A stretch of 64,000 nucleotides of DNA from IMGVR_UViG_3300027816_000051:186001-250000; one strand, 5' to 3'. Positions 29,899 through 49,697 are shown, counted from the stretch's first letter. The notes: a model not told the origin generated them from the letters alone. Numbers and translations are program-made.

Positions 29899-29902
29899 TG
29901 TA

Positions 29903-30205
29903 TTATTGATTTAAGATGTTAAACAATTTTGTACCAAGACCAAATAACTTTTCGGCCTTATCTTCTCTTTTTCCTTCACTACACACGTAGATTGACTTAT
30001 CAGGTAGAACACCCAAATCCAACATTCCAAATGTGTGTTCCCATTTACCATTGATGAATTGTTCACCTGTAAACCTTTCTTGTGCGTTGTACGCTTCGTA
30101 GGTCATTTTCAATTTGACATTATTCTCATTTTGAATAATTCTCATCTCATATGACTTATCTCTCAAGTGAGATGATACCGAGTGGATTACTTTTTCTTTT
30201 TTCAT
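29903..30205 (-). CDS. Hypothetical protein (probably leaderless)
   Basis: ATG lies 4 nt after TATCTTTG. Confidence 0.6.
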   Translation of the reverse strand: MKKEKVIHSVSSHLRDKSYEMRIIQNENNVKLKMTYEAYNAQERFTGEQFINGKWEHTFGMLDLGVLPDKSIYVCSEGKREDKAEKLFGLGTKLFNILNQ

Positions 30206-30265
30206 AATACAAAGATATAACAATTTTTCTTTTATACCAAATTTATTTTCAACTTTGTTGCCAAA

Positions 30266-30577
30266 CTAAATGTCCTCGACGGTAAAGTCATCCGACTCAA
30301 GGATGTCTATGATGTGTGCGAGTTCATATATGTCCAATTCAACTAACGAGAGTTCTATACTATCACCAAAACTTTCCGACATCACAGTACCATCAGGTAA
30401 TATTCCATACGCCGCGTATTGAACTCTACCATCATCTTCGTACATACCTTCGGTAACCCAAACTCCAAACACATTTCTAAATGTGATTTGTTGGTTCTCA
30501 CCAATAATGGTCGAACATTTGTTTTTAATTTTTTTGATTATTTCCTCTTGTAGGTCTTGAATTTTTTTCTTGTACAT
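30266..30577 (-). CDS. Hypothetical protein
   Basis: Own promoter; TAG stop inside the motif. Confidence 0.65.
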   Translation of the reverse strand: MYKKKIQDLQEEIIKKIKNKCSTIIGENQQITFRNVFGVWVTEGMYEDDGRVQYAAYGILPDGTVMSESFGDSIELSLVELDIYELAHIIDILESDDFTVEDI

Positions 30578-30699
30578 AATAAAATGTTTTAGTAATACAA
30601 AGATATAACAATTTTTCTTTTATACCAAATTTATTTTCAACTTTGTTGCCAACCTAAATCAATGTCCATCCCATAATATATGTGTACGAGGTTTTTAAT

Positions 30700-30725
30700 A
30701 AAAAACCCCACATTTCTGTGGGGTT
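30700..30725 (-). terminator. Intrinsic terminator (same hairpin reused near 34213, 40725, 41816)
   Basis: aaaaaaccccacatttctgtggggtt. Confidence 0.85.
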
Positions 30726-30740
30726 CTCTCCTTAAACCAA

Positions 30741-31331
30741 TCAATCATAAGTAATCCTCGCGTATTTTACTGTGACCCAGTTGTCCTTTACAACAATCTT
30801 ACCCATGTCCTCACCATCCTCGCCTTTCCAATAAACCTCACCATTTAATTTCACACCCCACTTCTCAAAGAAATGATTGATGATATATTTCAACCACTCA
30901 ACGTAGTTGTAAAACTTCTCACCACCATCCCATATTAGATGAGTTCCATTTTCATCCGTAGTCCACTGACACCATAAACCAGGTTGACATTTACCCTCTC
31001 GTGTTCTCAAATCATTTTGTGTCCACCTTTCGTTGTAGTTAGTTGTTAGAAAATCTAGTTGACCTGGAGGTGTATTGTAATCGACAATACTATCATCCTT
31101 GTCTTGACCTGCGAACCCATTACCACCAACAAAGTATTCACCATCGTTTCCGTAGGTTTCTTCTTTTGGTAGAAAAGGGTTTCCGTGTTCACCCTTAAAT
31201 AACTCATAGAGTTTCTCAACATTTCGTTTCATTCTACGAGTGTTGTTGAACTTGGTGATGTAATTCTTTTCATCACTAGTAAGTGGACGACTGAATTCAA
31301 ATCCACCTTCGAAATCGGTTGTGTATCCCAT
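30741..31331 (-). CDS. Conserved phage hypothetical protein (MGYTTDF family)
   Basis: QPGLWCQW, WDGGEKFYNYVEWL, WKGED. Confidence 0.7.
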   Translation of the reverse strand: MGYTTDFEGGFEFSRPLTSDEKNYITKFNNTRRMKRNVEKLYELFKGEHGNPFLPKEETYGNDGEYFVGGNGFAGQDKDDSIVDYNTPPGQLDFLTTNYNERWTQNDLRTREGKCQPGLWCQWTTDENGTHLIWDGGEKFYNYVEWLKYIINHFFEKWGVKLNGEVYWKGEDGEDMGKIVVKDNWVTVKYARITYD

Positions 31332-31410
31332 ACTTTTTTAATTTAATTGTATTACAAAGATATAACAATTTTTCTTTTATACCAAATTTTTTTTCAACTT
31401 TGTCGCCAAA

Positions 31411-31887
31411 CTAAATCCCCCCTGTGAATATGGGGTTTGGTCTGAACTCCAATTTGTACTTTGGGTTGTAACTACCACCCGAACAATTGCTACATGAATA
31501 AGACCTACTTCTTAAACGATGGGCTTTGGATACCTTACCACAACCAACACATGTTGCAATATATTTTGCTTCGGGTGTTTCAACTACTTTACTACTATAA
31601 CAACGATGTCCATCACAACCTATTTCAATCGCTTTCGACCTCCATACATGGTTATGTTTTTGACCAGGACAAAGTGCGTGTGCAATCTCATGTAGAATAG
31701 TATTCTTTACATGACTTTCATCATTAAGTAATGTCAATACTTTGGATAGTGTAATTTGTTTAGGTCTGTATTTACAACACCCAAACCTACTTTTTGCATT
31801 GTCATACGCAAATGTCCACCCCTTAACATCTAACTTGTGTTTGTGAATTAACTTCTCTGCTAACCGTTGTGCTTTAATTAAGTCCAT
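31411..31887 (-). CDS. SprT-like zinc metalloprotease
   Basis: FGCC, ILHEIAHAL, HNHVW, C-terminal CxxC pairs. Confidence 0.85.
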   Translation of the reverse strand: MDLIKAQRLAEKLIHKHKLDVKGWTFAYDNAKSRFGCCKYRPKQITLSKVLTLLNDESHVKNTILHEIAHALCPGQKHNHVWRSKAIEIGCDGHRCYSSKVVETPEAKYIATCVGCGKVSKAHRLRSRSYSCSNCSGGSYNPKYKLEFRPNPIFTGGI

Positions 31888-31908
31888 GTTGTTTTATTTT
31901 AGGCCAAA

Positions 31909-32298
31909 CTAAATTTCACCTTCACCTGTCGTGATGTACACTCCGTAATCGATGGTGTGCAATTGTGGTACTCCATCATTGTCCATGATGTGACCATCGA
32001 ATAACCAGTTGGGTTGAACTCGTGGATTGTATCGAACCCTACGACTTTCATCCTTGTATGGTTGACCTGTGTAAATCTTGATGTCCTTACAAAGTATCCA
32101 CGCACATACTGTTTTATTACCACCATCGAAAATCTTCTGTGCTGTTTTCCTGTGGTTCTTAAATGTGCAACCTGTCATGACCAACTGATTATCTGTTGGA
32201 CTGTAATACAATACACTACCATCAGGGTGTTGTACTTTCCACTTCATGTAGTTCTTACCTCTACCGAGATTGAACCTTACTTTAATACTTTTACTCAT
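31909..32298 (-). CDS. Hypothetical protein
   Basis: Own promoter; KTVCAW, YNP; TAG stop inside the motif. Confidence 0.65.
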   Translation of the reverse strand: MSKSIKVRFNLGRGKNYMKWKVQHPDGSVLYYSPTDNQLVMTGCTFKNHRKTAQKIFDGGNKTVCAWILCKDIKIYTGQPYKDESRRVRYNPRVQPNWLFDGHIMDNDGVPQLHTIDYGVYITTGEGEI

Positions 32299-32316
32299 CT
32301 TGATTGGTTTATAATA

Positions 32317-32348
32317 CAAATATAATACTAATTCTTTTATATTCCAAA
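32317..32348 (-). promoter_or_regulatory. Bacteroidota promoter, representative of about 28 similar ones between 27.5 and 49.6 kb
   Basis: TTTG-N20-TATATTTG on the - strand; similar elements near 30210, 30598, 31355, 33016, 34062, 37123, 40360, 42755, 44112, 46549, 46856. Confidence 0.88.
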
Positions 32349-32392
32349 TGTTTTTTTGCCAAACAAAAATCCCCCTGTGACGGGGGACCTTT

Positions 32393-32995
32393 TTATTCTT
32401 TCAAATCAAAAATCAATTCGGTGTAATTCATCATCCCATTGGTTACGAGTGGACTATCTTTTTCTACCGAGATAACATCTCTTGCCCACGAACCAACAAT
32501 CTCATTTTCATCATCACCTCTAAAATCTCCCCCACCCATTCCGTTACCTTCACTAGTTAATAGTGGTAAAGGGTGAATTTTTACACCATCCCATCCTTGA
32601 ATTTCGGGAACTTTGTTTTTATCCACGAACATTTTTTTGGTGTGGTTTACAATGTAGGGGTATTCATCCGTTGATGACACTTTGGGTTTGATTTGGTTTT
32701 CATCATTACAAAGTGAATACAAATTTGCATCGTACTCCTTCCCTTCCGAAATGACTTTTACACCTGGTTCTTCTCCTGCGTAATCACCCGCCCACACTAC
32801 ACGACTTTTGTAATGTTCACCTCTACGGGTTAATTGTTTTTCAAAAGTTGAAACGAAGTTGTTCCCTTGATAGGAATGCTCCATCAGTTTGAGTCCGTTG
32901 TCGTACTCGTGTGAATACATCCACGCTTTAACTGTTTCGTGTTCACCCTCTTTTGGGGTGTTACCTAAAATGATTGGTTTATAATATTGTCCCAT
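32393..32995 (-). CDS. Conserved phage hypothetical protein (MGQYY family)
   Basis: GLKLMEHS, WAGDYA, IHPLPLLT..GNG.GGGD, GSWARD. Confidence 0.7.
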   Translation of the reverse strand: MGQYYKPIILGNTPKEGEHETVKAWMYSHEYDNGLKLMEHSYQGNNFVSTFEKQLTRRGEHYKSRVVWAGDYAGEEPGVKVISEGKEYDANLYSLCNDENQIKPKVSSTDEYPYIVNHTKKMFVDKNKVPEIQGWDGVKIHPLPLLTSEGNGMGGGDFRGDDENEIVGSWARDVISVEKDSPLVTNGMMNYTELIFDLKE

Positions 32996-33270
32996 TGTTA
33001 TGTTGTTTTATGATACAAATATAATACTGTTATTATTATATTCCAAATAATTTTTTATCTTTTTTATTGTTTTCTTGCCAACCAAGTTTTTGGATTAACC
33101 AGGGTCACCAGCAAAATGACCAGTAAAACTGGCTGTTGCAACCAGTCTGAAGCCAGGTGATTTTGGTTGGCACAACTTAAAGTGTTGATTTTATTAGGAT
33201 TACAGAATGCCAAACAAAATTCCGATGACCAGCATCATGCGCGCAACATCTTCAAGCAATAAAAAACCCC

Positions 33271-34041
33271 TCATTGTGAGGGGTCTACTATAAACTTACT
33301 ATCTTTTTGAGGTCGTTTTCGTGTGACTTTATATTTTAATCCCACAATAATGTCGTTCTCATCTCGATATCTCATATCATATAAGTCACCATCGATAACT
33401 TTTCTACCCCAAAACTTTTTGGGTATTTCTTTTTTGAAAACAACGGCAACTCGTATACCATTGTTCAACATACTAATACAATCTGAAAAGTTTGTACCAC
33501 TAAATGAAAATGTTAAGTCGTAGTTCTTATACTTCTTAACTAACTCCATTCGTTTACCCACTTTGCTGTAGTCGTAAAACATAACATTAGGAAACAATTG
33601 CAAAATGTTTTTTCTTTTACCATCTATCTCCATATGAAAAGATTCGGGTGAAATGTCTGAAGTGTTATTTAAACGAACACTAAAGTGATAACCTTGTTTT
33701 TCTGCCTTCTTTTTTGCCGCCTCAATTTCTGCAACCATCCATTGCATGAAATACTGGCGATGTTCGAAAAACAATTTTGTTTTTTTAATTCTACTCTCAG
33801 TAATCATGTCATCTCTCATGTTCATTCGATTCATACCAGATTCGTTTAAACATAGTGCAGTACACTCCGCGTTTCTCATTGGGCAAACTTCGTAACCACT
33901 TAAGTCCGCGGGTGCGAGGTAAAGACTGTAGGTTAATTCATCATACTTGTACGCCTTAGCGTGTTTTGATGTCAGGTTAACTGAACCTAAATAATTGATT
34001 CCAGTTTCCTTTCTGGCTTGGGTTTTATTTCTGTACTCCAT
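33271..34041 (-). CDS. Gp88-like phage protein
   Basis: LYLAP, CP..C...CL, RLNNTSDI, FYDYSK, NYDLTFSFS, DGDLYDMR. Confidence 0.75.
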   Translation of the reverse strand: MEYRNKTQARKETGINYLGSVNLTSKHAKAYKYDELTYSLYLAPADLSGYEVCPMRNAECTALCLNESGMNRMNMRDDMITESRIKKTKLFFEHRQYFMQWMVAEIEAAKKKAEKQGYHFSVRLNNTSDISPESFHMEIDGKRKNILQLFPNVMFYDYSKVGKRMELVKKYKNYDLTFSFSGTNFSDCISMLNNGIRVAVVFKKEIPKKFWGRKVIDGDLYDMRYRDENDIIVGLKYKVTRKRPQKDSKFIVDPSQ

Positions 34042-34272
34042 ATAATATTGGTTTAACAATACAAATATAAAACGAATTCTTTTATATTCCAAATTTATTT
34101 TTATTTTTTTTCTTCAGGAGGGACCTGTTCTTCCCAGGGCGATATTGTTTGGCGGGCGCCAAACTAATTTAATAGACGAACTGTGCAGCTCCTCCGCACA
34201 CATTCGAGCAATAAAAAACCCCCACATTTCTGTGAGGGTTTTTCGAACCGAACATTAAATCAATATACTAAA

Positions 34273-34650
34273 CTAAAGAACCCCTTCTATTGAATGTCCC
34301 TTTTTGGTGAGGTTTTTACCTTTACGTTCATAGTTGTTGTAGCCAACCAAAAACAAATCGTCTTTGGTCCCTAACACCATCGAACCTTCAAGTTTCATTC
34401 CACCATAAGTTACTTTCAGCTTACGCATAAAATCATTGAAAGAACGCTCAAGCTGTACACCAATCTTATCGGTAGGAGGAACTGGTGCATTTTCAATGTG
34501 ATAACGAGTACCAACACGAGAAAATTTAATTCCCACCATTTCCTTTTTCTCAAAGTTTGGTAAACTCTCATTAAGGCATTCACGAATTTCGTGCAAAGAC
34601 TTCTTCAGAGAATTAGCCGTAGTCTTTCTTGGTTTTTTTATCATATTCAA
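34273..34650 (-). CDS. Basic hypothetical protein
   Basis: Cassette with own promoter and terminator. Confidence 0.55.
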   Translation of the reverse strand: MNMIKKPRKTTANSLKKSLHEIRECLNESLPNFEKKEMVGIKFSRVGTRYHIENAPVPPTDKIGVQLERSFNDFMRKLKVTYGGMKLEGSMVLGTKDDLFLVGYNNYERKGKNLTKKGHSIEGVL

Positions 34651-34899
34651 GTTTTTGAATTACAGTACAAAAGTAATAAGAATATTTTCGATAAACAACA
34701 AATATTTTCACTTTGTTCAACTTTTTTGTCAAAACCTTATACAAAAAGTGTCTTTTTTATTGGATTACAAACATTTGTGTGTTGAAAACTCCGCCAAACA
34801 AAATCTGGAGTCGTCTTCAGGATGTTACATCTTGTGAAATTTTGAGCAAAAAAAAGGGGTAACCTTTCGGTCACCCCAATCACTAACCCTAATCCAAAG

Positions 34900-35655
34900 T
34901 TAGAAACGAAGGTTCAACTTGTCCTCATTACGACGCTTGTAGTTGTAAATGTCTTCAATCATTTCCGCGTATGATTTTTTATCACCACACATATAGATTG
35001 AACTTGGACGAAGTTTTACTTTATGTAAAAATTCTTCAAACTTAAAATCGGGTTTCTTTTCCATAATGGTAAGAATAGTACGAACAAATACCGATTTGTT
35101 GTAACCCTTTTCAAAGTAAGGTTTCAGTTGGAGTAGGTTATTCGCCCATTCTTTGGCGGTTTCCATATTACCAACAACAAACTTACCATCCGCAAAATCT
35201 TGTTTGTCACAATGACGAGTACCAGAATTTTGTAGTAACATAATTCTTTCGGTCAAAGAAAACATCGGAAACTCTTTTGAAAAATCTTCCAAAGTTTTGT
35301 AAGATTTGTTTCCTTGTTCGGAAAAACCATGAATGTAATCTTTCTTACCCCACTCTTTCATGTTCTGGTTGAACTTACGTGCGGCTTCAAAGATACCTTT
35401 CGTGGTGTTGGGGATTGAGTTGTCTACAATAAAGTAGATACCTTTACCCGCTTCTTTTGCTGCGGTTAGTCGGTGTTGTCCGTCTACAACCACATACTGG
35501 GAGTTTACAATGATTGGAACGAGTTTTAATCCGTCCTTCTTCATCGAGTCTGTAATACGCTTAACGCGTGGAGAGTCTACCTCACGATTTACATTGTGAA
35601 GTTTGAACATACCCAAATTTTGGGTGAACTTTACTTGAACATTTTTTGTACTCAT
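34900..35655 (-). CDS. ParB-N/Srx domain protein
   Basis: NREVD, PIIVN, VVDGQHRLTA. Confidence 0.8.
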   Translation of the reverse strand: MSTKNVQVKFTQNLGMFKLHNVNREVDSPRVKRITDSMKKDGLKLVPIIVNSQYVVVDGQHRLTAAKEAGKGIYFIVDNSIPNTTKGIFEAARKFNQNMKEWGKKDYIHGFSEQGNKSYKTLEDFSKEFPMFSLTERIMLLQNSGTRHCDKQDFADGKFVVGNMETAKEWANNLLQLKPYFEKGYNKSVFVRTILTIMEKKPDFKFEEFLHKVKLRPSSIYMCGDKKSYAEMIEDIYNYKRRNEDKLNLRF

Positions 35656-36028
35656 TTTCGTTTCTAATTTTAGATTAAAGATTTAATGTGGGTACAAAGA
35701 TATAATAGTTTTTCTTTTTTTCCAAATTTTTTTTAAAGTTTTTTCAAAAAAGTTTTTCCACATACATCTTTGACTTTGTGTATGACAAACATACTAAAAC
35801 TTTTAAGGATATTCACCAAGAATACTAGTATTTCTTGCCAAACAAAATCGTCCAGCCGTCGTCCAGTTTTCCCCCTGGCGTATGTTAAAACGAAGATTTT
35901 CAGTATTTTAGAAACAAAAAAAGGGATTCCGAAGAACCCCTTTAGTGTGTCAAACCAAACACAAATTACAACTATGAAATGTAATCCAATAAAAAGTTAC
36001 ACATCATATTTTACATTGTCAAGTGTTT

Positions 36029-37102
36029 TTAGATTACAGGTAATACATCAAGTTCTTTACCTTTTTCTTGGTAGAACAAACTTCCACCATCATTTCCCTC
36101 ATCATCCATAGAAGGAATACATAGTGTTCCGTTGTCCAACTCAATACAAATTGGTCTCTTGTACCAACCCATAAGTTCCATTTCCTCATCGGTAAGATAA
36201 CGAACTGATTTGATAACTCGTCCCTTTAGGACTTTCTCACTTTGATTTACCCAATGGGTAGTTATTTCTTGATTTGTCATACGAATGGTTTTTTACAAAG
36301 GTATAAAGATTATTTCTTTTTACAAGTTATTTTTGCCAATCAATATTCACTGTTCACCATGTCTTCGGGTATCTTTCCAAAATATCTTGGGGATAGAGAA
36401 CACCATTACCATTAAGTAATACATCCTCCCACCAACGAATACCAATTTGTAAACGGGGTACTGCGAATTTTGGAATGTCATCTTGATGGACTCTAAAGAA
36501 CACATCGTTTCTTCCACCCGTTTCAGGTTCGCCTGGTGTAGGTAGTGTTTCTACTTCCTCACAATATTTTGCACGAACACCGAATTCTTGTTTTAACCAC
36601 TTTTCGAATTCCTTAATGTTGGACTTACCGATAAGAGTTGCGGGCCAAACACAAACTTGACTGAAATTTTTCATGTTACAAATAATTTAATTGACAATAA
36701 TCCTCAAGGTCAACTAATGGTATGCGACCATATTTTACGGAAGAATAATACCCTTGAGTTTCGTACCCTTTCTTCCATTGTTCGAACGCCTTACACGCCG
36801 CTCTGTGCGACTTGTAGTAAGGTACATCCCTTTCGAGTGTGAACCCATCAGGGGATAAAATTTGAATTTTCTGTGCCATATGATTAACGATAAAGAGTTA
36901 CATAGTCACCGAAATACTTTTCAATCACGCCAATCAAATTCTCATAATCCCCACTCATCATCTCCTCTTGAATTTTCTTGGAGTCCAAACCGAGTTGTTT
37001 CGCCCATTTTGAGGCGAGACCAATAAGAACGAACGCGTTCCCATCAGGTCCTGTGAGGTCAATCTCAATACCTCCTTGTTTTTCATCAATAGATTTTATC
37101 AT
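36029..37102 (-). other. Four small hypothetical genes (36029-36280, 36354-36674, 36676-36879, 36884-37102)
   Basis: Co-oriented ORFs with promoters; motifs SMDDEGNDGG, GGRND and LTGPDGNAF. Confidence 0.6.
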
Positions 37103-37244
37103 TGTCTTGTCGTTTTATAATACAAATATAAATCAGTAATTAATATAATCCAAATATTTTTTTATTTTTCTTGCCAATCTAATTTCCGTCCTGAACCGTG
37201 ACTCAGAGTCCTGAGAAATAAAAAAACCCCTTTCGGGGTTTCTC

Positions 37245-37652: not shown

Positions 37653-37977
37653 ATGTTTATTAATTTAACACCACAAATATAAAAGTATATAGAATATAAT
37701 CCAATAATTTTTTTATTTTTTTTGCCAAACAATTTGGTGGATTCCAGGTCCCCGCAGCAGGAAACCAGTAAAACCAGAAGCAATGACTAGAAAAAACCAG
37801 TTGTGCAACAGCAGCAACCAGCCCTTGATTTTGGTTGGCGAACCCAAACCATTGATTTTATTGGGTTTACAGAATGCCAAACAAAATCACGAACAGCAGC
37901 GCAACCAGCAGCAACTTCGGAGCAATAAAAAACCCCCACCTTTTGAGTGAGGGTTTTAACCAATAAAAATGAAACAA

Positions 37978-38667: not shown

Positions 38668-38687
38668 TTCTTTTACTTTTTAATTGT

Positions 38688-39735: not shown

Positions 39736-39737
39736 AG

Positions 39738-41631: not shown

Positions 41632-42035
41632 ATGGATGTTTTTTAATTTGATACAAATGTAATACACTTTTCATTATAATCCAAATAAATCTTTATTTTT
41701 TTTTTCTGACCCCAGAATTCACCGTACCATCTCAGAAATTGGTTGGCATCTGTCATACACCCGCCAAACTAAATTGAACACGGGATTTGCCGGCGACGAA
41801 TTTTTTTAGCAAACAAAAAACCCCCACATTTCTGTGAGGGTTCCTTAACCAAATAAAACTAATCTATGAACGACAAATCAAGTGTATTACACTTTAACCA
41901 AATATAGGAATTAAAACAAACATTGTCAATAGGAAAAACATAAGTATTACAATGCCACCCAAAATTCCATCCCAAAATTCCTTTCGGTCTTCTTGGTAAA
42001 CTTCTTTGAAAGTTGAAAACATTTCCTTTAACATA

Positions 42036-42395
42036 TCAATAATTGTTTTGATTATCGTAGTTGTCTCGGTAAACTCTTTTACGAGGTTGGTTGGTTCGTT
42101 GACCATTCCAATGGCGGTCTCCATTACCACCATTTTCGTAGTATGAGTTATTAATCATTTCATCAACCGATGGAACTTCAAAGTCCATATCACAACTTCC
42201 ATTCATCATCTTCCACTGAATTTCATAAATGGTTTTAATGTCTTCTTCAACATTGACATATGTACCATCTATGTATTCAATCTTCGTTGCTATCTTGTCG
42301 TTTCTTTTATCCAAGATACTAAAAATGTTTTTGACATTTTGTAGATTGACAAGTGTTGGGGTTCCTTTACCTTGATAAGTGAGTTTAATTAACAT
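42036..42395 (-). CDS. Hypothetical protein
   Basis: Own promoter; LVN..TKIEY..VNVEE pattern. Confidence 0.55.
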   Translation of the reverse strand: MLIKLTYQGKGTPTLVNLQNVKNIFSILDKRNDKIATKIEYIDGTYVNVEEDIKTIYEIQWKMMNGSCDMDFEVPSVDEMINNSYYENGGNGDRHWNGQRTNQPRKRVYRDNYDNQNNY

Positions 42396-42488
42396 TTTTT
42401 GTTTTTTTAATTATTGGACAAATATACAAATGAATTTTTGGAATATACAAACGATTGTGCCAATCAAAATCGGCGGTTCACCATCTCC

Positions 42489-42734
42489 TCAGATATTTCC
42501 CGAAAAGACAAGAAAATTGTTGGGTGGTAAATAAGTGTCGGGAGTGTCAATGATTTCATATTCATCTTCACCCTCAACTACACCAAGAGTCCTACCACTA
42601 TCCCAACGGACATTGATAACACCATGACCAACATGATAAATTGTTCCCATTGAACCTTCCTCAACGGGGTTAGGGTCGTTCTCCATTGAAACGAGACGAA
42701 TTCTTTTTCCGATTAATTTTTCGTTTATTTTCAT
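42489..42734 (-). CDS. DUF4314 family protein
   Basis: RIRLVSMENDPNPVEEGSMGTI..VRWDSGRTLG. Confidence 0.75.
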   Translation of the reverse strand: MKINEKLIGKRIRLVSMENDPNPVEEGSMGTIYHVGHGVINVRWDSGRTLGVVEGEDEYEIIDTPDTYLPPNNFLVFSGNI

Positions 42735-42809
42735 ATCTGTATTAGTTTATTAATACAAATATACAACTTATTTTATGATATCCAAATTTTTTTTAGGATA
42801 TTTTGCCAA

Positions 42810-43115
42810 TCAAATTGATGTCAATCTGAATATTCGTTTGAACTCTTTTTCAATTCTTCTGAATCTTATTTCGTCTTTTTCTCTAACATAACGCGATATT
42901 GTTTTGTTAAATTGAAAGTTAGAACGAGTAAGAAGATAGATAAATTTTCTCCTCTCCACTTTGTGACCTTCAAAGTTGTATGCCCATTCAACATCAACCG
43001 AAATATAATTTTCAGTTTCAATGATGTCACACACTTTACCTTCTTTTTCCGATTTTTTTAGGTAGTTCATTACTTCCTCATCGGTATTCAATGATATGTC
43101 GTTATAGTTTTTCAT
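42810..43115 (-). CDS. Hypothetical protein (probably leaderless)
   Basis: ATG 4 nt after TATATTTG; TGA stop inside the motif at 42805. Confidence 0.6.
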   Translation of the reverse strand: MKNYNDISLNTDEEVMNYLKKSEKEGKVCDIIETENYISVDVEWAYNFEGHKVERRKFIYLLTRSNFQFNKTISRYVREKDEIRFRRIEKEFKRIFRLTSI

Positions 43116-43350
43116 AATACAAATATACAATTCATTTTATGATATCCAAATTTATTTTAAAATATCCAATAACACCATCTACTGTTTCACCCGGCGTCGT
43201 AAAAATTTTGGTTGGCTGACCACATAAAACACTTAAATATAATAGGTTATCCGCCAAACAAAATCCCCACCAGGCGTGGGCTGGGCGAATTCTGGTATAA
43301 AAAAAAATCCCCGACTTTCGCCGAGGACTTTTCACCTAACCAAACAAAAT

Positions 43351-43758
43351 CTATTCGTATTCTTCTGCGTACAATTCACCCGTGAGGTACATGTCGTAAG
43401 TTTTTACTTCACCCTCCAACACTTCGGTTACTTTGTCAATAAGACTTTGGGTAATTTTCTTTACTCCATATTCTTCACGGACTTTCTTCTTTGAAACAAA
43501 GTACCAACCAACTTGTCCACTATCCCAACGACAACTGAACGGACTTGTGTTCATTGTAATTCCCGAGTGGTCGTACAAGTAAAGAGGTAAGATAACACAA
43601 ACATCTTCTTCTTTGATGATTGCGTTTTTCATTTCTTCCCAACCATTGTAGTTATTGTGGTTGTAGTCGTGTTTGTCTCCAAGGTCGTAACGTCCGTGAA
43701 AACACACCATTTTTCCGAGGTTGTCCCAACTCCGTGGGTTGTCAAAATCTTGATACAT
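43351..43758 (-). CDS. Conserved phage hypothetical protein
   Basis: PRSWDNLG, LPLYLYDHSGIT, WDSGQVG, YLTGE. Confidence 0.7.
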   Translation of the reverse strand: MYQDFDNPRSWDNLGKMVCFHGRYDLGDKHDYNHNNYNGWEEMKNAIIKEEDVCVILPLYLYDHSGITMNTSPFSCRWDSGQVGWYFVSKKKVREEYGVKKITQSLIDKVTEVLEGEVKTYDMYLTGELYAEEYE

Positions 43759-44367
43759 AGTCGTTATTATTTATTGGTTTATACAAATATATAACAATTT
43801 TATTCGTTTACCAAATCTTTTTTGCCAAACTTTATTCGTCTGTACGCCTTCGCCGAAGGTTTCGACTTCTGTAACATTTTCCTACGGACTATTTGTGCGA
43901 CGTGTCTCACACTTAATCCATTAAGGGTTTCATTCTTCATAGTTAAATTCGGTTTCATCTTCTATTTCTTTAAGTTTTTGTTCAAACTCATTTCTCATTT
44001 CATCGGTATCAAAGATTGGTTGTTTAGTTTCATCATCAATGTAATAGTAAACACCGACTTTGATTTCCGTTGGGATTGATTTCTTACTCATAGTAATTAT
44101 GTATTACGATACAAATATAAAACTATATTCAGTATAATCCAAATTTTTTTTCATACCTGTCGTCTCCATCCCACAAATTGTTTGGCGTGTTGTTTAATGT
44201 TTTGACCGAAAGATTAAACAAAACATATAGTGTAATACGCCTTTATTGAGTGTCATACAGTGCCAACCAAATTTAGGATACAGCACGTGCTGTGAGGTGA
44301 AACTAAAACGCAACAAAAAAGGGTAACATTTCTGCTACCCTTTTCCACCGCAACCGAGTTAAACCAA

Positions 44368-44916
44368 TTAAATCGACAAGTACAGGCGGTTGTGGTTGTA
44401 TAGTGCGACTGGGTTTTCTTCCGCAATCTTACCATATTCCTTTTTAATGATTTCGTACATTCTATCTTGTGGTTCGTTAATACACTCCGATAAAAGTTCA
44501 CAAAAACCATAGTTACTTTCATCAACTACTTCTTGTTCGGTACCAGGTAAACCACAATAGTACGCTTCCCCTACTTCGGAAATAAACATTCCCGAATAAA
44601 AACCTTTCAACTTAAAGTGATTAACGAATTTGTCCGCGTTACACCAAATAAAAATTGAATTGTCTTTTTCTTTTAATAGGTACACCATACTTTCATCAAT
44701 GATGAAACCATTTGAACCAGGAAATTGTCCAACCGAGAACAATCCCATAGGTGCTCCGTGTCCACACATTATTACTCTGTCGTGGGCGTCGATAAGTTTT
44801 CTAACTTCTTCTTTTGTTACCCCACCCGTGATAATTGTCTTATTCGGTATAGGTTCGTACACAATATCTAAAAATTGTGTCGATTTGTCTTTTGGATGAA
44901 TTACAAGTGTTTTCAT
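44368..44916 (-). CDS. Hypothetical protein with possible His-Cys peptidase dyad
   Basis: VIMCGHG and IFIWCNA. Confidence 0.5.
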   Translation of the reverse strand: MKTLVIHPKDKSTQFLDIVYEPIPNKTIITGGVTKEEVRKLIDAHDRVIMCGHGAPMGLFSVGQFPGSNGFIIDESMVYLLKEKDNSIFIWCNADKFVNHFKLKGFYSGMFISEVGEAYYCGLPGTEQEVVDESNYGFCELLSECINEPQDRMYEIIKKEYGKIAEENPVALYNHNRLYLSI

Positions 44917-45552
44917 TATTTTGTCGATTTTATGATACAAAGATATAACGAGTTTTTTATTCTACCAAATTTATTTTTATTTTTCTTGCCAACTAACCAA
45001 ATAGTAACTTACCATTCGGTAACATCTCAGAACCGCTGCGTCGGGAAAATTTTGGTTGGCGTTCTTACAATCTGTAAAGTAAAAACCTACTAATCTGTAA
45101 AGTGGATGCCAAACAATTTTCACCCTGAACCGTGACTCAGGACTTCAGGTCATAAAAAAACCCCAACTTTCGTTGAGGTCTTGTCTTTACTCTTCTTCAC
45201 TATCCCGAAAAATTTGAATCGCTTCGTTGAACAATTCATTCTGTAATTGAAATAGTGTATATCCACTCTTAATACATTCATCTACCCAATCATTATCACC
45301 TTCAAAAATTCCTTCCCAACTTCTATTCGGTGGTAAACCCATTTCGTTTTCGGTTTGAATATGTTGGTAAATTAAACCAACAACTTCTTGTCTTGTCATT
45401 TTAATTAGTTTTGGTGAAACACAAAGATAAAACATTTTTTCGTATAATCCAAATTTTTTTATATCTTTCTTGCCAACCAATTTTCACCCTGAACCGTGAC
45501 TCAAGTTCTTCAGGTCATAAAAAAACCCCCACCTTTCGGTGAGGGTTCGTTG

Positions 45553-45855
45553 TTAAAAAACTTCGGGTTCAAACTCAATTTGTGGGATACCCAATAGTTC
45601 GTAATCATCAAATTCCCCCCAATCGGGTTCATTGAAATAACGAAAACGGACATCCATAGTTCCATCTTCGTTCCACCAAATACGGACTTGGGTTCGGTGG
45701 TCGGAAATAAAAAACCCTTCAAGTTGTTCCAACTTCTCAATTAGAGGTTGAACATCCGAATCGTCAATAGTTACTTCTTCGTTATTAACGAGGAAATCAT
45801 CAACACATTCACAATTACCATCGTAGTCGATAGAGAAATCAATGTACTTTTCCAT
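45553..45855 (-). CDS. Acidic hypothetical protein
   Basis: Cassette with promoter and terminator. Confidence 0.6.
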   Translation of the reverse strand: MEKYIDFSIDYDGNCECVDDFLVNNEEVTIDDSDVQPLIEKLEQLEGFFISDHRTQVRIWWNEDGTMDVRFRYFNEPDWGEFDDYELLGIPQIEFEPEVF

Positions 45856-46144
45856 TTTGTTTTTTTTGTTTTATTGGTTTAACAATACAAATATAAATCA
45901 AATTTTAATATACACAACATTTGAGTATATTTTTTTTTATCTATTTTGCCAAACTACCACGAAACAGATGACCACCTGTCGTCAAATCCGAAAAATTGTT
46001 TGGCGTAGGTGTAATACAATGTATGATAGTGTCATACAACGCCAACCAAAATTCCGAGCTGCAACTGTGCAGCTCCACTGCACACATCCGAGCAAAAAAA
46101 ATCCCCGACTTTCGCCGAGGACTTTCCACCTAACTAAACCAAAC

Positions 46145-46519
46145 CTAATATGAACCAAACCTTTCTTTTAACGCCACGTCAAACGCGGACATAAATGTTA
46201 CTTGTTCTTTGACTTCTTCAAGTGAAAGTTTGGTATCACCATTTTCACCCGTTTCATCATCGTAACCCATTATCAACCCATTACCCGATAGAGGTTGTCG
46301 GTAATTTTTCAACTTGAAAAACTTTGTGTTTTCATCAACACTCATTATACCTTCTTCATCAACATACACATCGTTTTCGTTGTTGTAACTAACAATCTCA
46401 AAAATAGAACACTTTAAGTGTCCATAGATACTTGGTAACTGACTACCAGTTTCATCACGAACAACTTCAACTTCGGAAATTGTTTTGTTTTCTACGTCGA
46501 TTAAAATTCCTCTTGACAT
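46145..46519 (-). CDS. DUF3846-like protein
   Basis: DVYVDEEG, PLSGNGLIMG. Confidence 0.6.
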   Translation of the reverse strand: MSRGILIDVENKTISEVEVVRDETGSQLPSIYGHLKCSIFEIVSYNNENDVYVDEEGIMSVDENTKFFKLKNYRQPLSGNGLIMGYDDETGENGDTKLSLEEVKEQVTFMSAFDVALKERFGSY

Positions 46520-46614
46520 TTCTTTTTTGTTTTATTGGTTTAACGATACAAATATAATACTATTTCTTTTATATTCCAAATCTTTTTTTGCCAATCAAAT
46601 TCCAACATCTCCCG

Positions 46615-47980
46615 TCAGGAGGTCAGGTATTTCTTGTCTTTGACAAATTTGAGGTGTCTACATTCCTCAATAGTCAATCCCACAAATTCGTTGGGAGTGA
46701 AACTGATTTCATCGGGATAGTAGTCGAACAAAAATTCTTCTTGTCCATTTTCCATTGTAACCCACACTTGGGGCATCGGGTCGAACAAACTCTTTGGTTG
46801 TTCCGTAATACGAGATGAGATAACTTTCATGATTTTGTCTATTGGTTTAACTATACAAATATAAAACTATTTTTCTTATATACCAAATTTATTTTTATTT
46901 TTCTCAGAACCGTCGTCCGTATCCAAAAATTGGTTGGCGTAGGTGTAATACGATACTCACTATTTGTCATACGGCGCCAAACAATTTTCCTTCAGGGCCC
47001 TGACTCAAGTCCTGAAATGTTCACCTTATCAATAAGGGAAACAAATAAAAAACCCCCACCATTACTGATGAGGGTTAGTCTGAACCAACAAACTAAATTC
47101 AATTTAAACAAAGATTTTTCATAAGGTCGGAAACTTGGTAAGGTTTATAAAAATCAAAAACCTCTTGATGTTTTTCATCGGTTACAAAATTGTGGAACTC
47201 AACATTCAAAACGCCCTTGTCAAAGGTTGTTTCAACACTACACAAAATTTCGTGTCCATCCCTTTCAATGATTTGTGGAACAACTCGGTCGTACACCATT
47301 CTACCGATTGGGTCGTTTGGTACTGGTCCACCACCAACACCATACTCGGTTTCCCCTTCTTCGTTTACTTTTTTCAAAAGGTACATTTTTACATTGGGTA
47401 CACTATCGTTTGTTCCCAACATTTCTTCGGTACTCACTTTTGCGGAGTGTGTCATTCCTTGAATAAAATCTCTGATTTCTTCAATGTCTTTGTAATTGTT
47501 CATACTTGTTCTTTTTATTTGGTTTAACAATACGAATATAATATGATTAAACGGATATTCCAAATAAATTTATATTTTTTTTGCCAACTTACGATACAAG
47601 ATGTCGAGGGACAGAAGACGGATTTTGATTTTTGGTTGGCGAGCGTAATACGATAATACCAATGTGTAATACCCCGCCAAACAATTTTCTACGCTGCTCA
47701 AATCCACCACAGAACCTCGTGTAAATAAAAAACCCCCAACTTTCGTTGAGGGTTAATTACCATTTTGGAATTTTTAGAACCTTTGAGGTTGTGGTTTCTT
47801 TTTACTCTTGATGTAATTTTTGATGTCCTCAAACAAAATGATAAAGAACATACCAATACCCATACAAGAAAATAAGAACATACCCATTTGATTGTCTACG
47901 GGAATATCCCAAGTTAATGATACCCACATTGAGTAAACAATGAACCCGATGATTGCGATGTAAGGAAATAACTTTTTCAT
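46615..47980 (-). other. Three single-gene cassettes (46615-46830, 47099-47503, 47774-47980; the last is a two-TM protein)
   Basis: Each has its own -33/-7 promoter. Confidence 0.6.
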
Positions 47981-48078
47981 AATTGTTTCTTTTGTTTGGT
48001 TTAACGATACAAATATAATATAAGTTTCAATATAAACAACATTTTTTTATATCTATTTTGCCAACTTGATAACACCAA

Positions 48079-48276
48079 CAACTTCTCCTTCGAGCAACAG
48101 CGCATGGTTGGAAATTAGATTGGCGGTTTTAGCAACACCTAAAGCATTTAGCAACTTCTCCTTCGAGCAATTGCGCATGAGGGAAATTAGATTGGCGGTT
48201 TTAGCAACACCTAAAGCATTTAGCAACTTCTCCTTCGAGCAATTGCGCATGAGGGAAATTAGATTGGCGGTTTTAG
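48079..48276. repeat. 72-bp tandem repeat, about 2.7 copies
   Basis: Unit caacttctccttcgagcaattgcgcatgagggaaattagattggcggttttagcaacacctaaagcatttag starts at 48079 (variant), 48152 and 48224. Confidence 0.95.
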
Positions 48277-48479
48277 TCCGTGTCGGCGCATTTGCAACAA
48301 ACTCGCCAAACAATATCTAACAGCGCAGCCCGGGTGAAATTCTGTTCCCAAATTTTTTCTTACTTTTTTTATTCGTTCCCGCCAAACAACATTCCCGATG
48401 GTTCACGGGGTTCGGAAAATTTCACACACAAAAAAAGGGGATACTTTCGTACCCCCTTCGGTTTTTCTTTCGGTGTGTG

Positions 48480-49043
48480 TTACTCCTTTACAATTTCGTA
48501 CCTATCTCCGTTTACCGAAATTTCAAGTACATTGTCAAGGTCGGGTGTTATCGGTTTAACCTCTCTATCCAAACCTTGTTTTTCGTTACTACTCTTTCTA
48601 TCACTTATCCACTTTTCAAACAATGTTTTGTCTATTGAGTTACCACGAAATTCGTACTCCGTTGTTCCTTTGATTTCGGGAAACCACTCTACCATAAGGT
48701 AGGTTTTTGTTTCGGTGTCGGTGTCAGTCAGTAATGATTTACTGATATGTTTTTTACCCGTTGGACTTTCAACCTTAAAGGTGTTCGGGTCTTTACCCTC
48801 TTTCATAAGGTTGTTGTGTACCCTCTTTTCGTAGTCAGTTACCAAACGATAAGTTTTAGATGATACCTTAAAGATTTCCTTATAGTAAGGGTTTAATTCT
48901 TTGGTGTCCTTTGTCTTTTGTAAAACTTCTTTGTAAAGGGTTTTCATTTTTACCCCTACAAAAGTGTTAGGACTTTTTTCCTCAATCTCTTTGATGATAC
49001 TGATGATTTCGGACTTCGTTACTTTTTTGATTTCTTTGTTCAT
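48480..49043 (-). CDS. Hypothetical protein
   Basis: Cassette with promoter and terminator; NPY, DYEKRV motifs. Confidence 0.65.
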   Translation of the reverse strand: MNKEIKKVTKSEIISIIKEIEEKSPNTFVGVKMKTLYKEVLQKTKDTKELNPYYKEIFKVSSKTYRLVTDYEKRVHNNLMKEGKDPNTFKVESPTGKKHISKSLLTDTDTETKTYLMVEWFPEIKGTTEYEFRGNSIDKTLFEKWISDRKSSNEKQGLDREVKPITPDLDNVLEISVNGDRYEIVKE

Positions 49044-49304
49044 ACTTTTATTTTTTAGTTTGTTAGGAATACACAAATATAAAACACTATTTCATATAAA
49101 CAAAACTTTTTTTTATTTATTTCGCCAGACTACCACGAACCCGATGACCACCTGTCGTCCGTATCCGAAAATTGGTTGGCGAGTCGGTGCAATTATGGTC
49201 TATTCGCCAATCAAATTTCCACCTGAACCATCTCCTCAAGTTCACACAAATCTTCTTGGACAAAAAAAATCCCCACCTTTCGGTGAGGACTTTCGGTGTG
49301 GTGT

Positions 49305-49562: not shown

Positions 49563-49697
49563 ATTTTTATTAATTGGTTTGTGGGTACAAAGATATAACA
49601 ATTTTAAAATAATACAAGTGAAAGTTATTCACATCCTGAATGTGGATTTTGACCACCCTGAACCTGACGACCCCCATCCCACAAATTGTTTGGCATA

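What the first reader, a model, noticed from the sequence alone, without database searches (positions are those of the whole stretch)
30205..49292. Mix-and-match regulatory modules suggest a gene-cassette shuffling array
Seen: unrelated genes are joined by reused parts. These include a 65-bp promoter+motif unit (x3) and terminators ccccacatttctgtg (x4), atccccgactttcgccgaggacttt (near 43307, 46101), ccccaactttcgttgagg (near 45161, 47734) and ccccacctttcggtgagg (near 45527, 49271). Shared segments include cctgaaccgtgactca (near 37190, 45124, 45488), aactgtgcagctcc..gcacacat.cgagcaa (34179, 46063) and ctaccacgaa..gatgaccacctgtcgtc (45954, 49129). Established: promoter/stem-loop (PeSL) cassettes mediate modular shuffling in T4-type phages. 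Inference: a hypervariable host-takeover or anti-defence array diversified by recombination between modules.
Basis: partly seen in the sequence, partly recalled or inferred. Interest (0 to 1): 0.6.

Follow-up and report, generated by a model that had tools for sequence, protein, structure and literature searches.

The report
Phage early-gene cassette shuffling array
A 26-kb block of about 46 small early genes in a 288-kb freshwater phage of Bacteroidota is built from reused promoter, terminator and motif modules, and relatives show that recombination between these modules has added, removed and reordered single genes, as in the PeSL cassettes of T4-type phages.

Summary
That element is the motif TTGNTTGGC: 46 copies in the window against 1.5 expected, and 46 of the genome's 52 copies.

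The array is larger than reported, about 24,185-49,700, all on the minus strand. It holds nearly all host-type promoters of the genome, so it is the early region.

Among about a dozen relatives from IMG/VR, gene content and order are not invariant. Thirteen single-cassette insertions or deletions are each flanked by 12-67-nt direct repeats made of these modules. Distant relatives carry the same genes in shuffled order with mosaic identities.

The genome encodes gp32-like and UvsX-like recombination proteins. No integrase, resolvase or Y1 transposase was found.

New here: the motif lies 32, 42 or 52 nt upstream of the -7 box and forms inverted pairs spaced at a 10.5-bp period. Related lineages carry variant motifs in the same architecture.

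Verdict: a PeSL-like system in an unrelated phage group. Anti-defence function and excised circles remain untested.

The parts
24185..49700 (-). Whole early-gene array: about 46 small genes, all on the minus strand
   Evidence: ORF map. GC skew switches at about 24 kb and 50 kb. 24 of 50 strict sigma-A promoter matches in the genome lie here. 46 of 52 genome copies of TTGNTTGGC lie here.
30188..30271 (-). Copy 1 of the 65-81-nt promoter+motif unit (TAGTTTGGCAACAAAG, A-tract, -33, -7), upstream of gene 30205..29903
   Evidence: family D2. It is the flank repeat of cassette 30272-30586.
30576..30659 (-). Copy 2 of the same unit, upstream of gene 30577..30266
   Evidence: family D2. 60-nt exact repeat with copy 1.
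31333..31416 (-). Copy 3 of the same unit, upstream of gene 31331..30741
   Evidence: family D2. It is the flank repeat of the 1,067-nt segment absent from G002.
45179..45471 (-). Variable cassette (promoter, gene 45435..45187 and its terminator); absent from G001, G005 and G002
   Evidence: Flanked by a 62-nt repeat, 56 nt identical, made of terminator plus post-terminator unit.
42810..43102 (-). Variable cassette (gene 43115..42810, 101 aa); absent from G001, G005 and G002; a homolog is present in L117
   Evidence: Flanked by a 51-nt promoter repeat, 46 nt identical.
40087..40358 (-). Variable cassette (promoter, 73-aa gene 40341..40120, small terminator, TTGTTTGGC); absent from G001, G005 and G002
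   Evidence: Both borders begin at TTTTGTTTGGC.
37178..37672 (-). Variable cassette (135-aa gene 37652..37245); absent from G001 and G005; present in G002, G003 and L116, with a 41%-identical homolog in L119 and L121
   Evidence: Flanked by a 64-nt repeat of motif, A-tract and promoter.
30272..30586 (-). Variable cassette (103-aa gene 30577..30266); absent from G001 and G005
   Evidence: Flank repeat 60 nt, 59 nt identical.
46930..46984 (-). Example of a post-terminator inverted pair: TTGTTTGGC, 37-nt loop, GCCAACCAA. Other pairs span 33163-33217, 37831-37884, 40626-40681, 43208-43261, 44178-44270, 45052-45116, 45996-46049, 47632-47684 and 49172-49214. Close pairs lie at about 34145-34166 and 41739-41771.
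   Evidence: All ten pairs tested fold as hairpins, nine of them with the mismatch at the N position shown in the minimum-energy fold, z -1.3 to -3.9. Pair spacing is periodic at 10.5 bp.
46546..46598 (-). Example of a full early promoter: TTGATTGGC, 33 nt to the -7 box TATATTTG, with -33 TTTGG between. Other promoter cores lie at 30207-30249, 30595-30637, 31352-31394, 32314-32356, 33013-33055, 34059-34101, 35692-35734, 36293-36335, 37120-37162, 40034-40076, 40357-40399, 41651-41693, 42753-42795, 43781-43823, 44109-44151, 44935-44977, 45419-45461, 45885-45927, 46853-46895, 48007-48049, 49071-49113 and 49585-49627.
   Evidence: family D4. The -7 consensus of Bacteroidetes sigma-A is given in PMC9723704.
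40722..40752 (-). Example of a reused terminator (GC hairpin with a GAAA-type loop, then a T run). Others lie at 30697-30727, 33258-33288, 34211-34241, 34856-34877, 35920-35943, 37929-37957, 41813-41843, 43300-43330, 44309-44352, 45152-45182, 45518-45548, 46094-46124, 47051-47076, 47724-47754, 48434-48459 and 49262-49292.
   Evidence: families D6 and D7. Stems keep pairing through compensatory changes in relatives.
34900..35655 (-). ParB/Srx-like protein with a DGQHR motif, 251 aa, encoded inside the array. It is a candidate DNA binder and is unproven.
   Evidence: phrog_12305 ParB-like, E 6e-22. The model (pLDDT 80) matches ParB, Noc and KorB by fold, probability 1.0, TM 0.3-0.4. Present in all 8 motif-bearing genomes first compared and not found in the 6 L118-L123 loci. 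Its divergence does not track the motif variants.
48110..48253 (-). Exact 72-nt tandem duplication in the 499-nt spacer upstream of gene 47980..47774. Each unit carries an inverted motif variant.
   Evidence: family D16. Copy number differs in an otherwise identical strain contig.

Best explanation
The stretch is most of the early-gene region of a 288-kb lytic phage of freshwater Bacteroidota.

Anatomy. About 46 small genes lie on one strand. Most are separate transcription units read by the host sigma-A RNA polymerase. Each unit is built from interchangeable modules, in this order:
- an upstream TTGNTTGGC element;
- one to three helical turns of A-tract;
- the -33 TTTG and -7 TAnnTTTG boxes;
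- a short leader and the gene;
- a GC hairpin/T-run terminator;
- often an inverted pair of the same motif behind the terminator.

Mechanism. The modules are 50-80 nt long and 80-100% alike. General homologous recombination, probably by the phage's own UvsX-like and gp32-like proteins, can therefore cross over between non-allelic modules. This can happen within one genome, giving deletion, a possible circle and re-insertion. It can also happen between co-infecting relatives, giving insertion, replacement and reordering. Each gene moves with its own promoter and terminator. This is how PeSL cassettes of T4-type phages work, but here it is built from unrelated sequence.

Shown: the anatomy; the restriction to this region; gene gain, loss and reordering among relatives; module repeats at every junction examined; the absence of known site-specific recombinases.

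Inferred: that recombination is homology-driven and uses phage enzymes; that the promoters are early; that the TTGNTTGGC element is a DNA-level protein-binding or curvature-linked promoter element.
For: Identity of the phage: a 288,260-bp virus record, 92% complete. Its UvrD helicase is nearest to those of Bacteroides and Flavobacterium phages.

Promoters match the sigma-A -7 box of Bacteroidetes. 30 of 46 genes have their own box, 20 have the phased motif and 19 have a strict terminator. Strict promoter matches are concentrated in this region.

A phage sigma factor is encoded elsewhere. This fits host-polymerase early genes and phage-sigma later genes.

Relatives: G001, G005 and L052 are three independent assemblies with the same structure. 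G002, G003, G004, L116, L117 and L118-L123 were also compared.

Thirteen indels are flanked by 12-67-nt direct repeats of the terminator module, the motif+A-tract+promoter module, or the motif alone.

Gene order is shuffled in G003, G004, L116, L117 and the L119 clade, with all called genes on one strand.

Identities are mosaic. In L117, genes 29-31 are 88-92% identical to ours while their neighbours are 59-78%. In G001, most genes are 80-100% identical but three are 41-67%.

Exact repeats within relatives are at most 31-63 nt, so misassembly is unlikely.

gp32-like SSB (E 3.7e-16) and a UvsX-like recombinase (phrog_97, E 7e-17) lie side by side.

No Phage_integrase or Resolvase match was found, and no Y1_Tnp match above the cut-off.
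Against: - No recombination intermediate or circle was seen. Only Logan contigs could be laid, and their joints have short sides of 20-45 nt.
- Two junctions share only the motif: 21 nt in G001 and 12 nt in L119. That is short for homologous exchange and would also fit a site-directed process.
- Early timing and promoter activity are inferred from consensus alone.
- All relatives are metagenome assemblies.
- Selection against gene-disrupting events would by itself place surviving indels in spacers.
Confidence: 0.75

Rival explanations
1. A dedicated, site-specific cassette-exchange system. In this reading the TTGNTTGGC sites, singly or as hairpin-forming inverted pairs, are recombination sites comparable to integron attC, cut and joined by an unrecognised phage recombinase.
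For: - Several cassettes begin and end exactly at the motif: 40087-40358, and the 475-nt insertion in G001 at window 46598.
- One indel in the sister clade is flanked only by that clade's own motif.
- Inverted pairs behind genes have a mismatch at the N position in all ten pairs of the window.
- A strain that is otherwise identical lost 68 nt starting exactly at an arm edge.
Against: - No tyrosine or serine recombinase was found, and no Y1 transposase above the cut-off, in a genome that is 92% complete.
- At least six of the 13 junction repeats contain no motif. They are promoter-only or terminator-only.
- Cassettes carry their own promoters.
- Pair spacing follows the DNA helical repeat, which points to double-stranded DNA rather than a folded single strand.
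Confidence: 0.1
2. The repeats are only shared regulatory signals, and the TTGNTTGGC element is a binding site of one regulator of the early promoters. That regulator might be phage- or host-encoded, for example the array's ParB-like protein acting like KorB. Gene-content differences then arise by ordinary illegitimate recombination and selection, with no special role for the modules.
For: - The motif ends 31-33, 41-43 or 51-53 nt before the -7 box in 43 non-redundant promoters.
- An orthologous promoter differs by an 11-nt indel that keeps the phase.
- Inverted pairs are spaced 13, 24, 33-37, 42-47, 54-56 and 81-86 nt apart. The best period is 10.5 bp, with resultant 0.77.
- The motif is conserved between divergent spacers.
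- Lineages carry their own variants in the same architecture.
- A ParB-fold protein is encoded in the array.
Against: - Every indel examined has module repeats at both borders. Random illegitimate events would not give that.
- Modules are homogenised within each genome, which itself suggests exchange between them.
- A regulatory role and a recombination role do not exclude each other. This rival mainly disputes the mechanism of shuffling.
- ParB-like divergence does not track motif variants. Proteins 84% alike go with different motifs, and proteins 42% alike go with the same motif.
Confidence: 0.1
3. The inverted pairs are small selfish palindromic elements of the MITE, REP or BIME type, or back-up bidirectional terminators or RNA 3' stabilisers. 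They spread in the spacers and are incidental to cassette exchange.
For: - They are intergenic and occur in both orientations.
- Arms are lineage-specific.
- All ten tested pairs fold, with energies of -12 to -20 kcal/mol.
- Arms are flanked by A and T runs.
- One pair is missing in a strain that is otherwise identical.
Against: - No transposase was found.
- No target-site duplication was noticed.
- The pairs lie downstream of strong terminators, so they are rarely transcribed.
- Loops are 25-75 nt, too long for intrinsic terminators.
- Single motif copies are phased to promoters.
- The helical periodicity of the spacing is unexpected for RNA hairpins.
Confidence: 0.05

Closest known systems
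PeSL (promoter-early stem-loop) cassettes of T4-type phages (Arbiol et al. 2010, PMC2839356; Comeau et al. 2014, PMC4122927)
   Same: - Dense repeats of a strong host-type early promoter, an AT-rich upstream tract and a terminator stem-loop.
- Concentrated in a hyperplastic region full of ORFans.
- Indels and replacements between close relatives are bordered by the repeats.
- Each gene travels with its own promoter and terminator.
- The phage has T4-like recombination proteins.
   Different: - The host is Bacteroidota. The promoter is the -33/-7 sigma-A type, with no sigma-70 enrichment.
- The terminator is separate from the promoter, 60-250 nt upstream of it, rather than overlapping it.
- There is a third component, the 9-nt motif, phased to the promoter and also present as inverted pairs, with lineage-specific variants.
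- Mini-circles were not shown.
- There is no sequence relationship to PeSL.
Integron gene cassettes with attC sites
   Same: An array of single-gene cassettes in one orientation. Imperfect inverted repeats lie behind many genes. Some cassette borders lie exactly at a short conserved site.
   Different: No integrase was found. Cassettes have their own promoters. Crossover positions vary between module types. Pair spacing follows the duplex helical repeat.
KorB/OB operator network of plasmid RK2 and other ParB-family regulators (PMC11790492)
   Same: A ParB-fold protein is encoded in the region. One short site is scattered many times at varying distances upstream of many promoters.
   Different: The sites are 9-nt units, single or in pairs with variable spacing, not one 13-16-bp palindrome. 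Binding is untested. Protein divergence does not follow motif variants. The GERRxRA box of canonical ParB (recalled from general knowledge, not checked here) is replaced by DGQHR.
REP/BIME and MITE-like intergenic palindromes
   Same: Short palindromic units, specific to a lineage, in both orientations behind genes. They are possible substrates for recombination.
   Different: No RAYT or other transposase was found. The elements are confined to one 26-kb region. Single copies are phased to promoters.

Membership tests
PeSL cassettes (T4-type phages) | Repeated strong early promoter recognised by the host primary sigma factor | tested here: met
   At least 30 of 46 genes have a TAnnTTTG box, most with a -33 TTTG. 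The consensus is as in PMC9723704. This rests on sequence only; activity was not measured.
PeSL cassettes (T4-type phages) | AT-rich tract upstream of the promoter and an associated terminator stem-loop | tested here: met
   A-tracts of 9, 19 or 29 nt lie between the motif and the -33 box. 29 terminator-like sites against 13.2 expected. The stem-loop is separate from the promoter rather than overlapping it.
PeSL cassettes (T4-type phages) | Concentration in hyperplastic regions next to ORFans | tested here: met
   Motif and promoters are confined to genome 210-236 kb. Most products have no Pfam family or only a DUF.
PeSL cassettes (T4-type phages) | Indels and replacements between close relatives bordered by the repeats | tested here: met
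   13 events with 12-67-nt flank repeats.
PeSL cassettes (T4-type phages) | Excised mini-circles carrying one chimeric module | tested here: inconclusive
   Only assembled contigs could be laid. One 'goes back' joint (42527 to 40359) has a 39-nt side and does not join module to module.
PeSL cassettes (T4-type phages) | Sigma-70 type -35/-10 sequence and membership of the T4 superfamily | tested here: not met
   Sigma-70 consensus is not enriched: 70 against 62.3 +/- 6.4. The only T4-like traces are a weak gp19 hit, gp32 and UvsX-like. This is an analogue, not a member.
Integron | IntI-type tyrosine recombinase | tested here: not met
   No PF00589 match in the genome, which is 92% complete; the controls were positive.
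Integron | Promoterless cassettes, each ending in an attC with a fixed crossover point | tested here: not met
   Cassettes carry their own promoters. Junction repeats are of three kinds.
REP/RAYT or MITE | Cognate Y1 or other transposase | tested here: not met
   PF01797 gives only 15.3 bits in a 92-aa frame, below the cut-off. No integrase or resolvase.
ParB/KorB operator network | ParB-family protein with an N-terminal ParB/Srx domain and a DNA-binding domain | tested here: met
   phrog_12305, E 6e-22. Foldseek matches to ParB, Noc and KorB over about 240 columns, probability 1.0. Sequence-level hits are weak.
ParB/KorB operator network | The protein binds the scattered sites | not testable with these tools
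   The gene and the motif co-occur in 8 of 8 motif-bearing genomes first compared and in 0 of 6 L118-L123 loci. That is a single phylogenetic contrast, and there is no co-variation in the wider set.

The most novel reading that the evidence does not exclude
The lineage-specific short motif has two roles at once. The variants are TTGNTTGGC here; TTCTGTGGC, TTCTTTGGC, GTTTTGGCAG, CTAATTGGCAC and TTGTTTCGC in other lineages; and TTACTGGGG in the sister clade. In this reading the motif is the operator of a dedicated early-region DNA-binding factor that sits in helical phase with about 40 promoters. It is also the preferred junction at which cassettes are exchanged. The phage group would then maintain a self-specified cassette-exchange and control system: a functional cross between PeSL, an integron attC array and a KorB-type global operator network.
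Probability: 0.15. Interest if true: 0.8.

Novelty: new variant of a known kind. Interest (0 to 1): 0.6.

Why it matters
Promoter/terminator-mediated cassette shuffling has so far been described for T4-type phages of Proteobacteria. This case shows that it also arises in large aquatic phages of Bacteroidota, with a completely different promoter type. That suggests a general route by which big lytic phages turn over their early accessory genes.

A recent survey of large aquatic Bacteroidota phages (PMC12619734) pointed to variable genomic islands whose gain and loss dynamics are unknown. Whether this phage belongs to that lineage is not shown. This array offers a concrete mechanism and clear cassette borders for such islands.

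The borders define about 46 single-gene units here, and many more in relatives. They are natural candidates for screens of host-takeover and anti-defence functions.

The phased, lineage-specific motif is a testable handle on early transcription control in a phylum where phage regulation is almost unstudied.

Tried and rejected
- Rfam gathering scan and tRNA scan of the window: nothing.
- Megablast of 20 kb against the INPHARED phage records: no match.
- Coding explanation for the motif (a shared C-terminal peptide): rejected. Copies occur in both orientations, behind terminators and in different frames, although a few overlap stop codons.
- Sigma-54 and sigma-70 readings of TTGGCA, checked by eye only against the sequences: the following TTG is not conserved among relatives and the spacing does not fit. 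Sigma-70 consensus is not enriched.
- Second upstream promoter using the motif's TTTG as a -33 box: the 16-nt spacing is too short.
- Assembly artefact: exact repeats in relatives are at most 31-63 nt, and three independent assemblies agree.
  - The joints have short sides.
  - At least one pair of loose ends (45862/45906) proved to be a paralogous module elsewhere in the genome.
  - The loose ends at 40359, 42777, 42808 and 43108 lead into sequence absent from the genome and from all loci held. This is weak support for further alternative cassettes.
  - RNA runs hold pieces of genes 14, 16, 17 and 18, but do not prove transcription.
- Relocation of cassette 37 in G002: dropped. The proteins are only 38% identical.
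- ParB-like protein as a co-evolving partner of the motif: the wider set shows no co-variation.
- Search for a DNA-binding protein in the sister clade: nothing in Pfam.
- Motif copies outside the array as possible autoregulatory sites: they are coding repeats or isolated matches.
- Moraphage membership: no class II LysRS family hit and only a weak gp19 hit. Left open.
- DUF932, DUF3846 and DUF4314 as known anti-defence markers: none of the papers listed by the full-text search contains these names. No such claim is made.

Full report
WHAT THE WINDOW IS. The window is bases 186,001-250,000 of a single 288,260-bp virus record, 33% G+C and rated 92% complete. It has no close relative among deposited phages. 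Its UvrD-type helicase is nearest to those of Bacteroides, Chryseobacterium and Flavobacterium phages, at 33-36% identity. Near-identical DNA occurs in freshwater and lake metagenomes of 16 studies. Many IMG/VR contigs are 100% identical to it. The genome encodes a sigma-70-family factor, no RNA polymerase beta subunit, and a gp32-like SSB next to a UvsX-like recombinase. It may belong to the large aquatic Bacteroidota phages described in PMC12619734. I could not show that.

OBSERVATION. The repeats are far beyond chance:
- a promoter family of 23 copies;
- 29 terminator-like sites against 13.2 +/- 3.8 in shuffles;
- a 9-nt motif, TTGNTTGGC, with 46 matches against 1.47 expected.

The array is larger than reported. 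Genes run on the minus strand from about 49,700 down to 24,185.

ANATOMY. Read in the direction of the genes, a typical unit has these parts:
- TTGNTTGGC, often followed by AAnAAA;
- an A-tract;
- -33 TTTG(G);
- -7 TAnnTTTG;
- a leader of about 20-30 nt;
- the gene;
- a GC-rich hairpin, often with a GAAA-type loop, and a T run;
- about 30 nt of G+C-richer spacer;
- in twelve spacers, an inverted pair TTGNTTGGC - loop - GCCAANCAA.

The -7 box is the consensus of Bacteroidetes sigma-A (PMC9723704). E. coli-type promoters are not enriched. Of 46 credible genes, 30 have their own -7 box; gene 45435..45187 makes it 31 once its start is corrected. Twenty have the motif at a phased distance and 19 have a strict terminator. 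The rest sit in short operons.

Strict promoter matches (TTTG, 18-21 nt, TAnnTTTG) number 50 in the whole genome. Of these, 24 lie in this block on this strand, against about 12 genome-wide in shuffles. The motif is equally confined: 46 of 52 genome copies. The few outside copies are coding repeats or isolated matches.

Together with the phage sigma factor elsewhere, this marks the block as the host-polymerase-dependent, hence early, region. That is an inference from sequence.

A pattern scan of IMG/VR and two protein-guided scans gave relatives at several distances.
- G001, G005 and L052 are three independent assemblies of one type, about 90% identical in DNA.
- G002 is about 80% identical.
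- G003, L116 and L117 are 76-78% identical in protein for gene 18.
- G004 is 68% identical.
- The clade L118-L123 is about 65% identical.

Gene content and order are not invariant.
- Against G001/G005, our genome has five extra single-gene cassettes: 45179-45471, 42810-43102, 40087-40358, 37178-37672 and 30272-30586. It lacks at least four that they have.
- G002 shares three of those absences, keeps 37178-37672, lacks 30275-31341 and has its own insertions.
- More distant relatives hold many of the same gene families in a different order, always on the same strand. G004 reads 16-11-9-14-18-30-27-12-35-43-21..24-32-33 in our numbering. L117 reads 4-29-15-16-18-9-27-28-30-31-33-34-43-39-40-42-44-45 (shared genes only; lineage-specific ORFs left out). 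In L119, genes 2 and 14 are adjacent, and gene 1 lies next to gene 18.
- Within the L119 clade, close relatives again differ by single cassettes.

Protein identities are mosaic. In L117, genes 29-31 are 88-92% identical to ours while their neighbours are 59-78%. In G001, most genes are 80-100% identical but three are 41-67%. Cassette 15 is present in our genome and in L117 but absent from the nearer G001 and G002.

Misassembly is an unlikely cause. Exact repeats inside the relatives are at most 31-63 nt, and one junction shares only about 11 nt.

JUNCTIONS. For 13 insertions or deletions I aligned the two borders within the genome that carries the extra segment. Each pair of borders is a direct repeat of 12-67 nt, mostly 50-65 nt at 80-98% identity. 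The repeats are of three kinds:
- terminator, with or without the post-terminator spacer (five events);
- motif plus A-tract plus promoter, or promoter alone (six events);
- the motif alone (two events: 21 nt in G001, and 12 nt of the sister clade's own motif in L119).

The three near-identical 65-bp units at 30.2-31.4 kb are explained by this. G002 has one module between genes 35 and 38. G001 has two, with gene 36 between them. Our genome has three, with genes 36 and 37.

Crossovers in all kinds of module fit homologous exchange between dispersed repeats. So do the presence of gp32 and UvsX-like genes and the absence of an integrase, a resolvase or a Y1 transposase. That is the PeSL mechanism (PMC2839356). 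They argue against a strict site-specific system.

THE TTGNTTGGC ELEMENT. This is the part not covered by the PeSL description.

(a) Promoter-proximal copies. In 43 non-redundant promoters of this clade the motif ends 31-33, 41-43 or 51-53 nt before the -7 box, with 11, 21 and 11 promoters in the three classes. The same spacings recur in L138, L144 and L151. One orthologous promoter differs between genomes by an 11-nt indel that keeps the phase. The spacer consists of A-tracts, so curvature units of one helical turn may be what varies.

(b) Inverted pairs behind terminators.
- Spacing falls at 13, 24, 33-37, 42-47, 54-56 and 81-86 nt in 56 non-redundant pairs. The best period is 10.5 bp, with resultant 0.77. 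Orthologues inflate the count, but six separate spacing classes share one phase.
- All ten pairs tested can fold as hairpins, at -12 to -20 kcal/mol and z -1.3 to -3.9. The two arms differ at the N position in all ten pairs of the window, and nine minimum-energy folds show that position unpaired.
- They lie behind strong terminators, so I favour a function on double-stranded DNA.

(c) Lineage variation.
- The motif is conserved where the surrounding spacer has diverged.
- Other lineages have variants in the same architecture. The sister clade L118-L123 has TTACTGGGG and its complement (16-36 forward and 12-31 reverse copies per locus). It has almost no TTGNTTGGC, and the reverse holds in our clade.
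- Other lineages have TTCTGTGGC, TTCTTTGGC, GTTTTGGCAG, CTAATTGGCAC or TTGTTTCGC.
- Uniformity within a genome with divergence between lineages fits a sequence-specific reader. It also fits homogenisation by the same inter-module recombination that moves the cassettes. I cannot separate the two.

(d) A candidate reader. The 251-aa product of 35655..34900 is a candidate.
- It has a ParB/Srx-type N-domain with a DGQHR motif. It matches phrog_12305, and its model matches ParB, Noc and KorB by fold.
- It is present in all eight genomes first compared that carry the motif, and was not found in the six sister-clade loci.
- In a wider set its divergence does not follow the motif variants.
- It remains a lead, not a finding.

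READS. One call of 5,991 letters on two DNA and two RNA runs was possible, and all runs are kept as contigs. No clean circle junction was seen. Joints between modules have short sides. One pair of loose ends (45862/45906), checked by eye against the window sequence, is a paralogous module elsewhere in the genome. Contigs that leave the reference at cassette borders 40359, 42777/42808 and 43108 continue into sequence found neither in this genome nor in any locus held. This weakly suggests further alternative cassettes in the same lakes. RNA libraries contain pieces of genes 14, 16, 17 and 18. That does not prove transcription.

GENE FUNCTIONS. Most products are small and many are acidic. They are ORFans or belong to families without known function: DUF932, DUF3846, DUF4314, DUF6915, DUF4241, GP88, L5 gp82, an Api92-like domain, SprT-like and bPH_2. 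No known anti-defence family was recognised.

COMPARISON AND NOVELTY. The array works like PeSL cassettes and meets their operational features, except for mini-circles (untested) and sigma-70/T4 membership (not met). It is an analogue built from Bacteroidetes signals. It is not an integron and not a REP/RAYT system (see Membership tests). I rate it a new variant of a known kind. The new aspects are the host phylum and promoter type, the separate third module with helical phasing and lineage-specific variants, and the breadth of the phenomenon. At least a dozen distinct lineages of large aquatic phages show an abundant motif of this family.

CAVEATS. All relatives are metagenome assemblies. Promoter strength, timing, terminator function and motif binding are inferred from sequence. 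Periodicity counts include related copies.

Noticed in passing
window 49690-49790 (minus strand), and L119 1049-1458: A G-run element with G-quadruplex-like spacing (runs of 3-6 G separated by 1-4 nt) sits at the head of the array, between the array and the divergent peptidase gene, next to one inverted motif copy. A similar G-run block lies in the sister clade next to that clade's own motif.
   Followed up: no
window 48110-48253: Exact 72-nt tandem duplication (about 2.6 units) in a 499-nt spacer. Each unit carries an inverted motif variant. One strain contig that is otherwise identical has one unit fewer, and several IMG/VR contigs end here, probably as assembly breaks.
   Followed up: partly
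window 47642-47709, compared with L074: A contig otherwise 100% identical lacks 68 nt: one arm, the loop and 26 nt of spacer of an inverted pair. The deletion starts exactly at the edge of the remaining arm, with no obvious microhomology.
   Followed up: partly
window 40464-40595 (+) and about 41900-42035 (-): Small hydrophobic ORFs of about 43-45 aa are hidden in long 'intergenic' spacers. One lies on the opposite strand inside the 435-nt spacer. The other follows gene 42395..42036 and is conserved in L119 (5776-5971).
   Followed up: no
window 45062-45105, 46005-46040, 46940-46975, 47642-47675: The loops of several inverted pairs contain two direct repeats about 22 nt apart: ACTTTACAGATT twice, or GTATGACA(C) and GTATTACA(C). 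GTATGACAC also forms a terminator loop at about 24140. This may be a second binding site.
   Followed up: no
window 34900-35655 (-): A ParB/Srx-like DGQHR protein is encoded inside the early array. Homologs at 24-100% identity occur in about 80 IMG/VR loci.
   Followed up: partly
L106 7258-7875 (-): In relative G005 a 205-aa gene on the opposite strand, with no Pfam family, is inserted between an inverted pair and the next promoter, at the place of window 46905-47101.
   Followed up: partly
genome 84,050-85,985 and 142,709-142,915 (outside the window): A gp32-like SSB lies directly followed by a UvsX-like recombinase. A sigma-70-family factor of 276 aa lies at 142.7 kb, with a weaker second hit at 40.9 kb.
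   Followed up: partly
window 49993-50610 (+), 54132-54794 (+), 59795-60484 (+), 6110-7219 (+), 10667-11539 (+): The flanking regions encode an M54-like metallopeptidase, a protein with a peptidoglycan-binding domain, a CAP-domain protein, a class I/II aminotransferase and a 2OG-Fe(II) oxygenase.
   Followed up: no
genome 113,123-116,030 (outside the window): A coding repeat rich in GTATTGGTTGG units produces chance matches to the motif. It is unrelated to the regulatory element.
   Followed up: no
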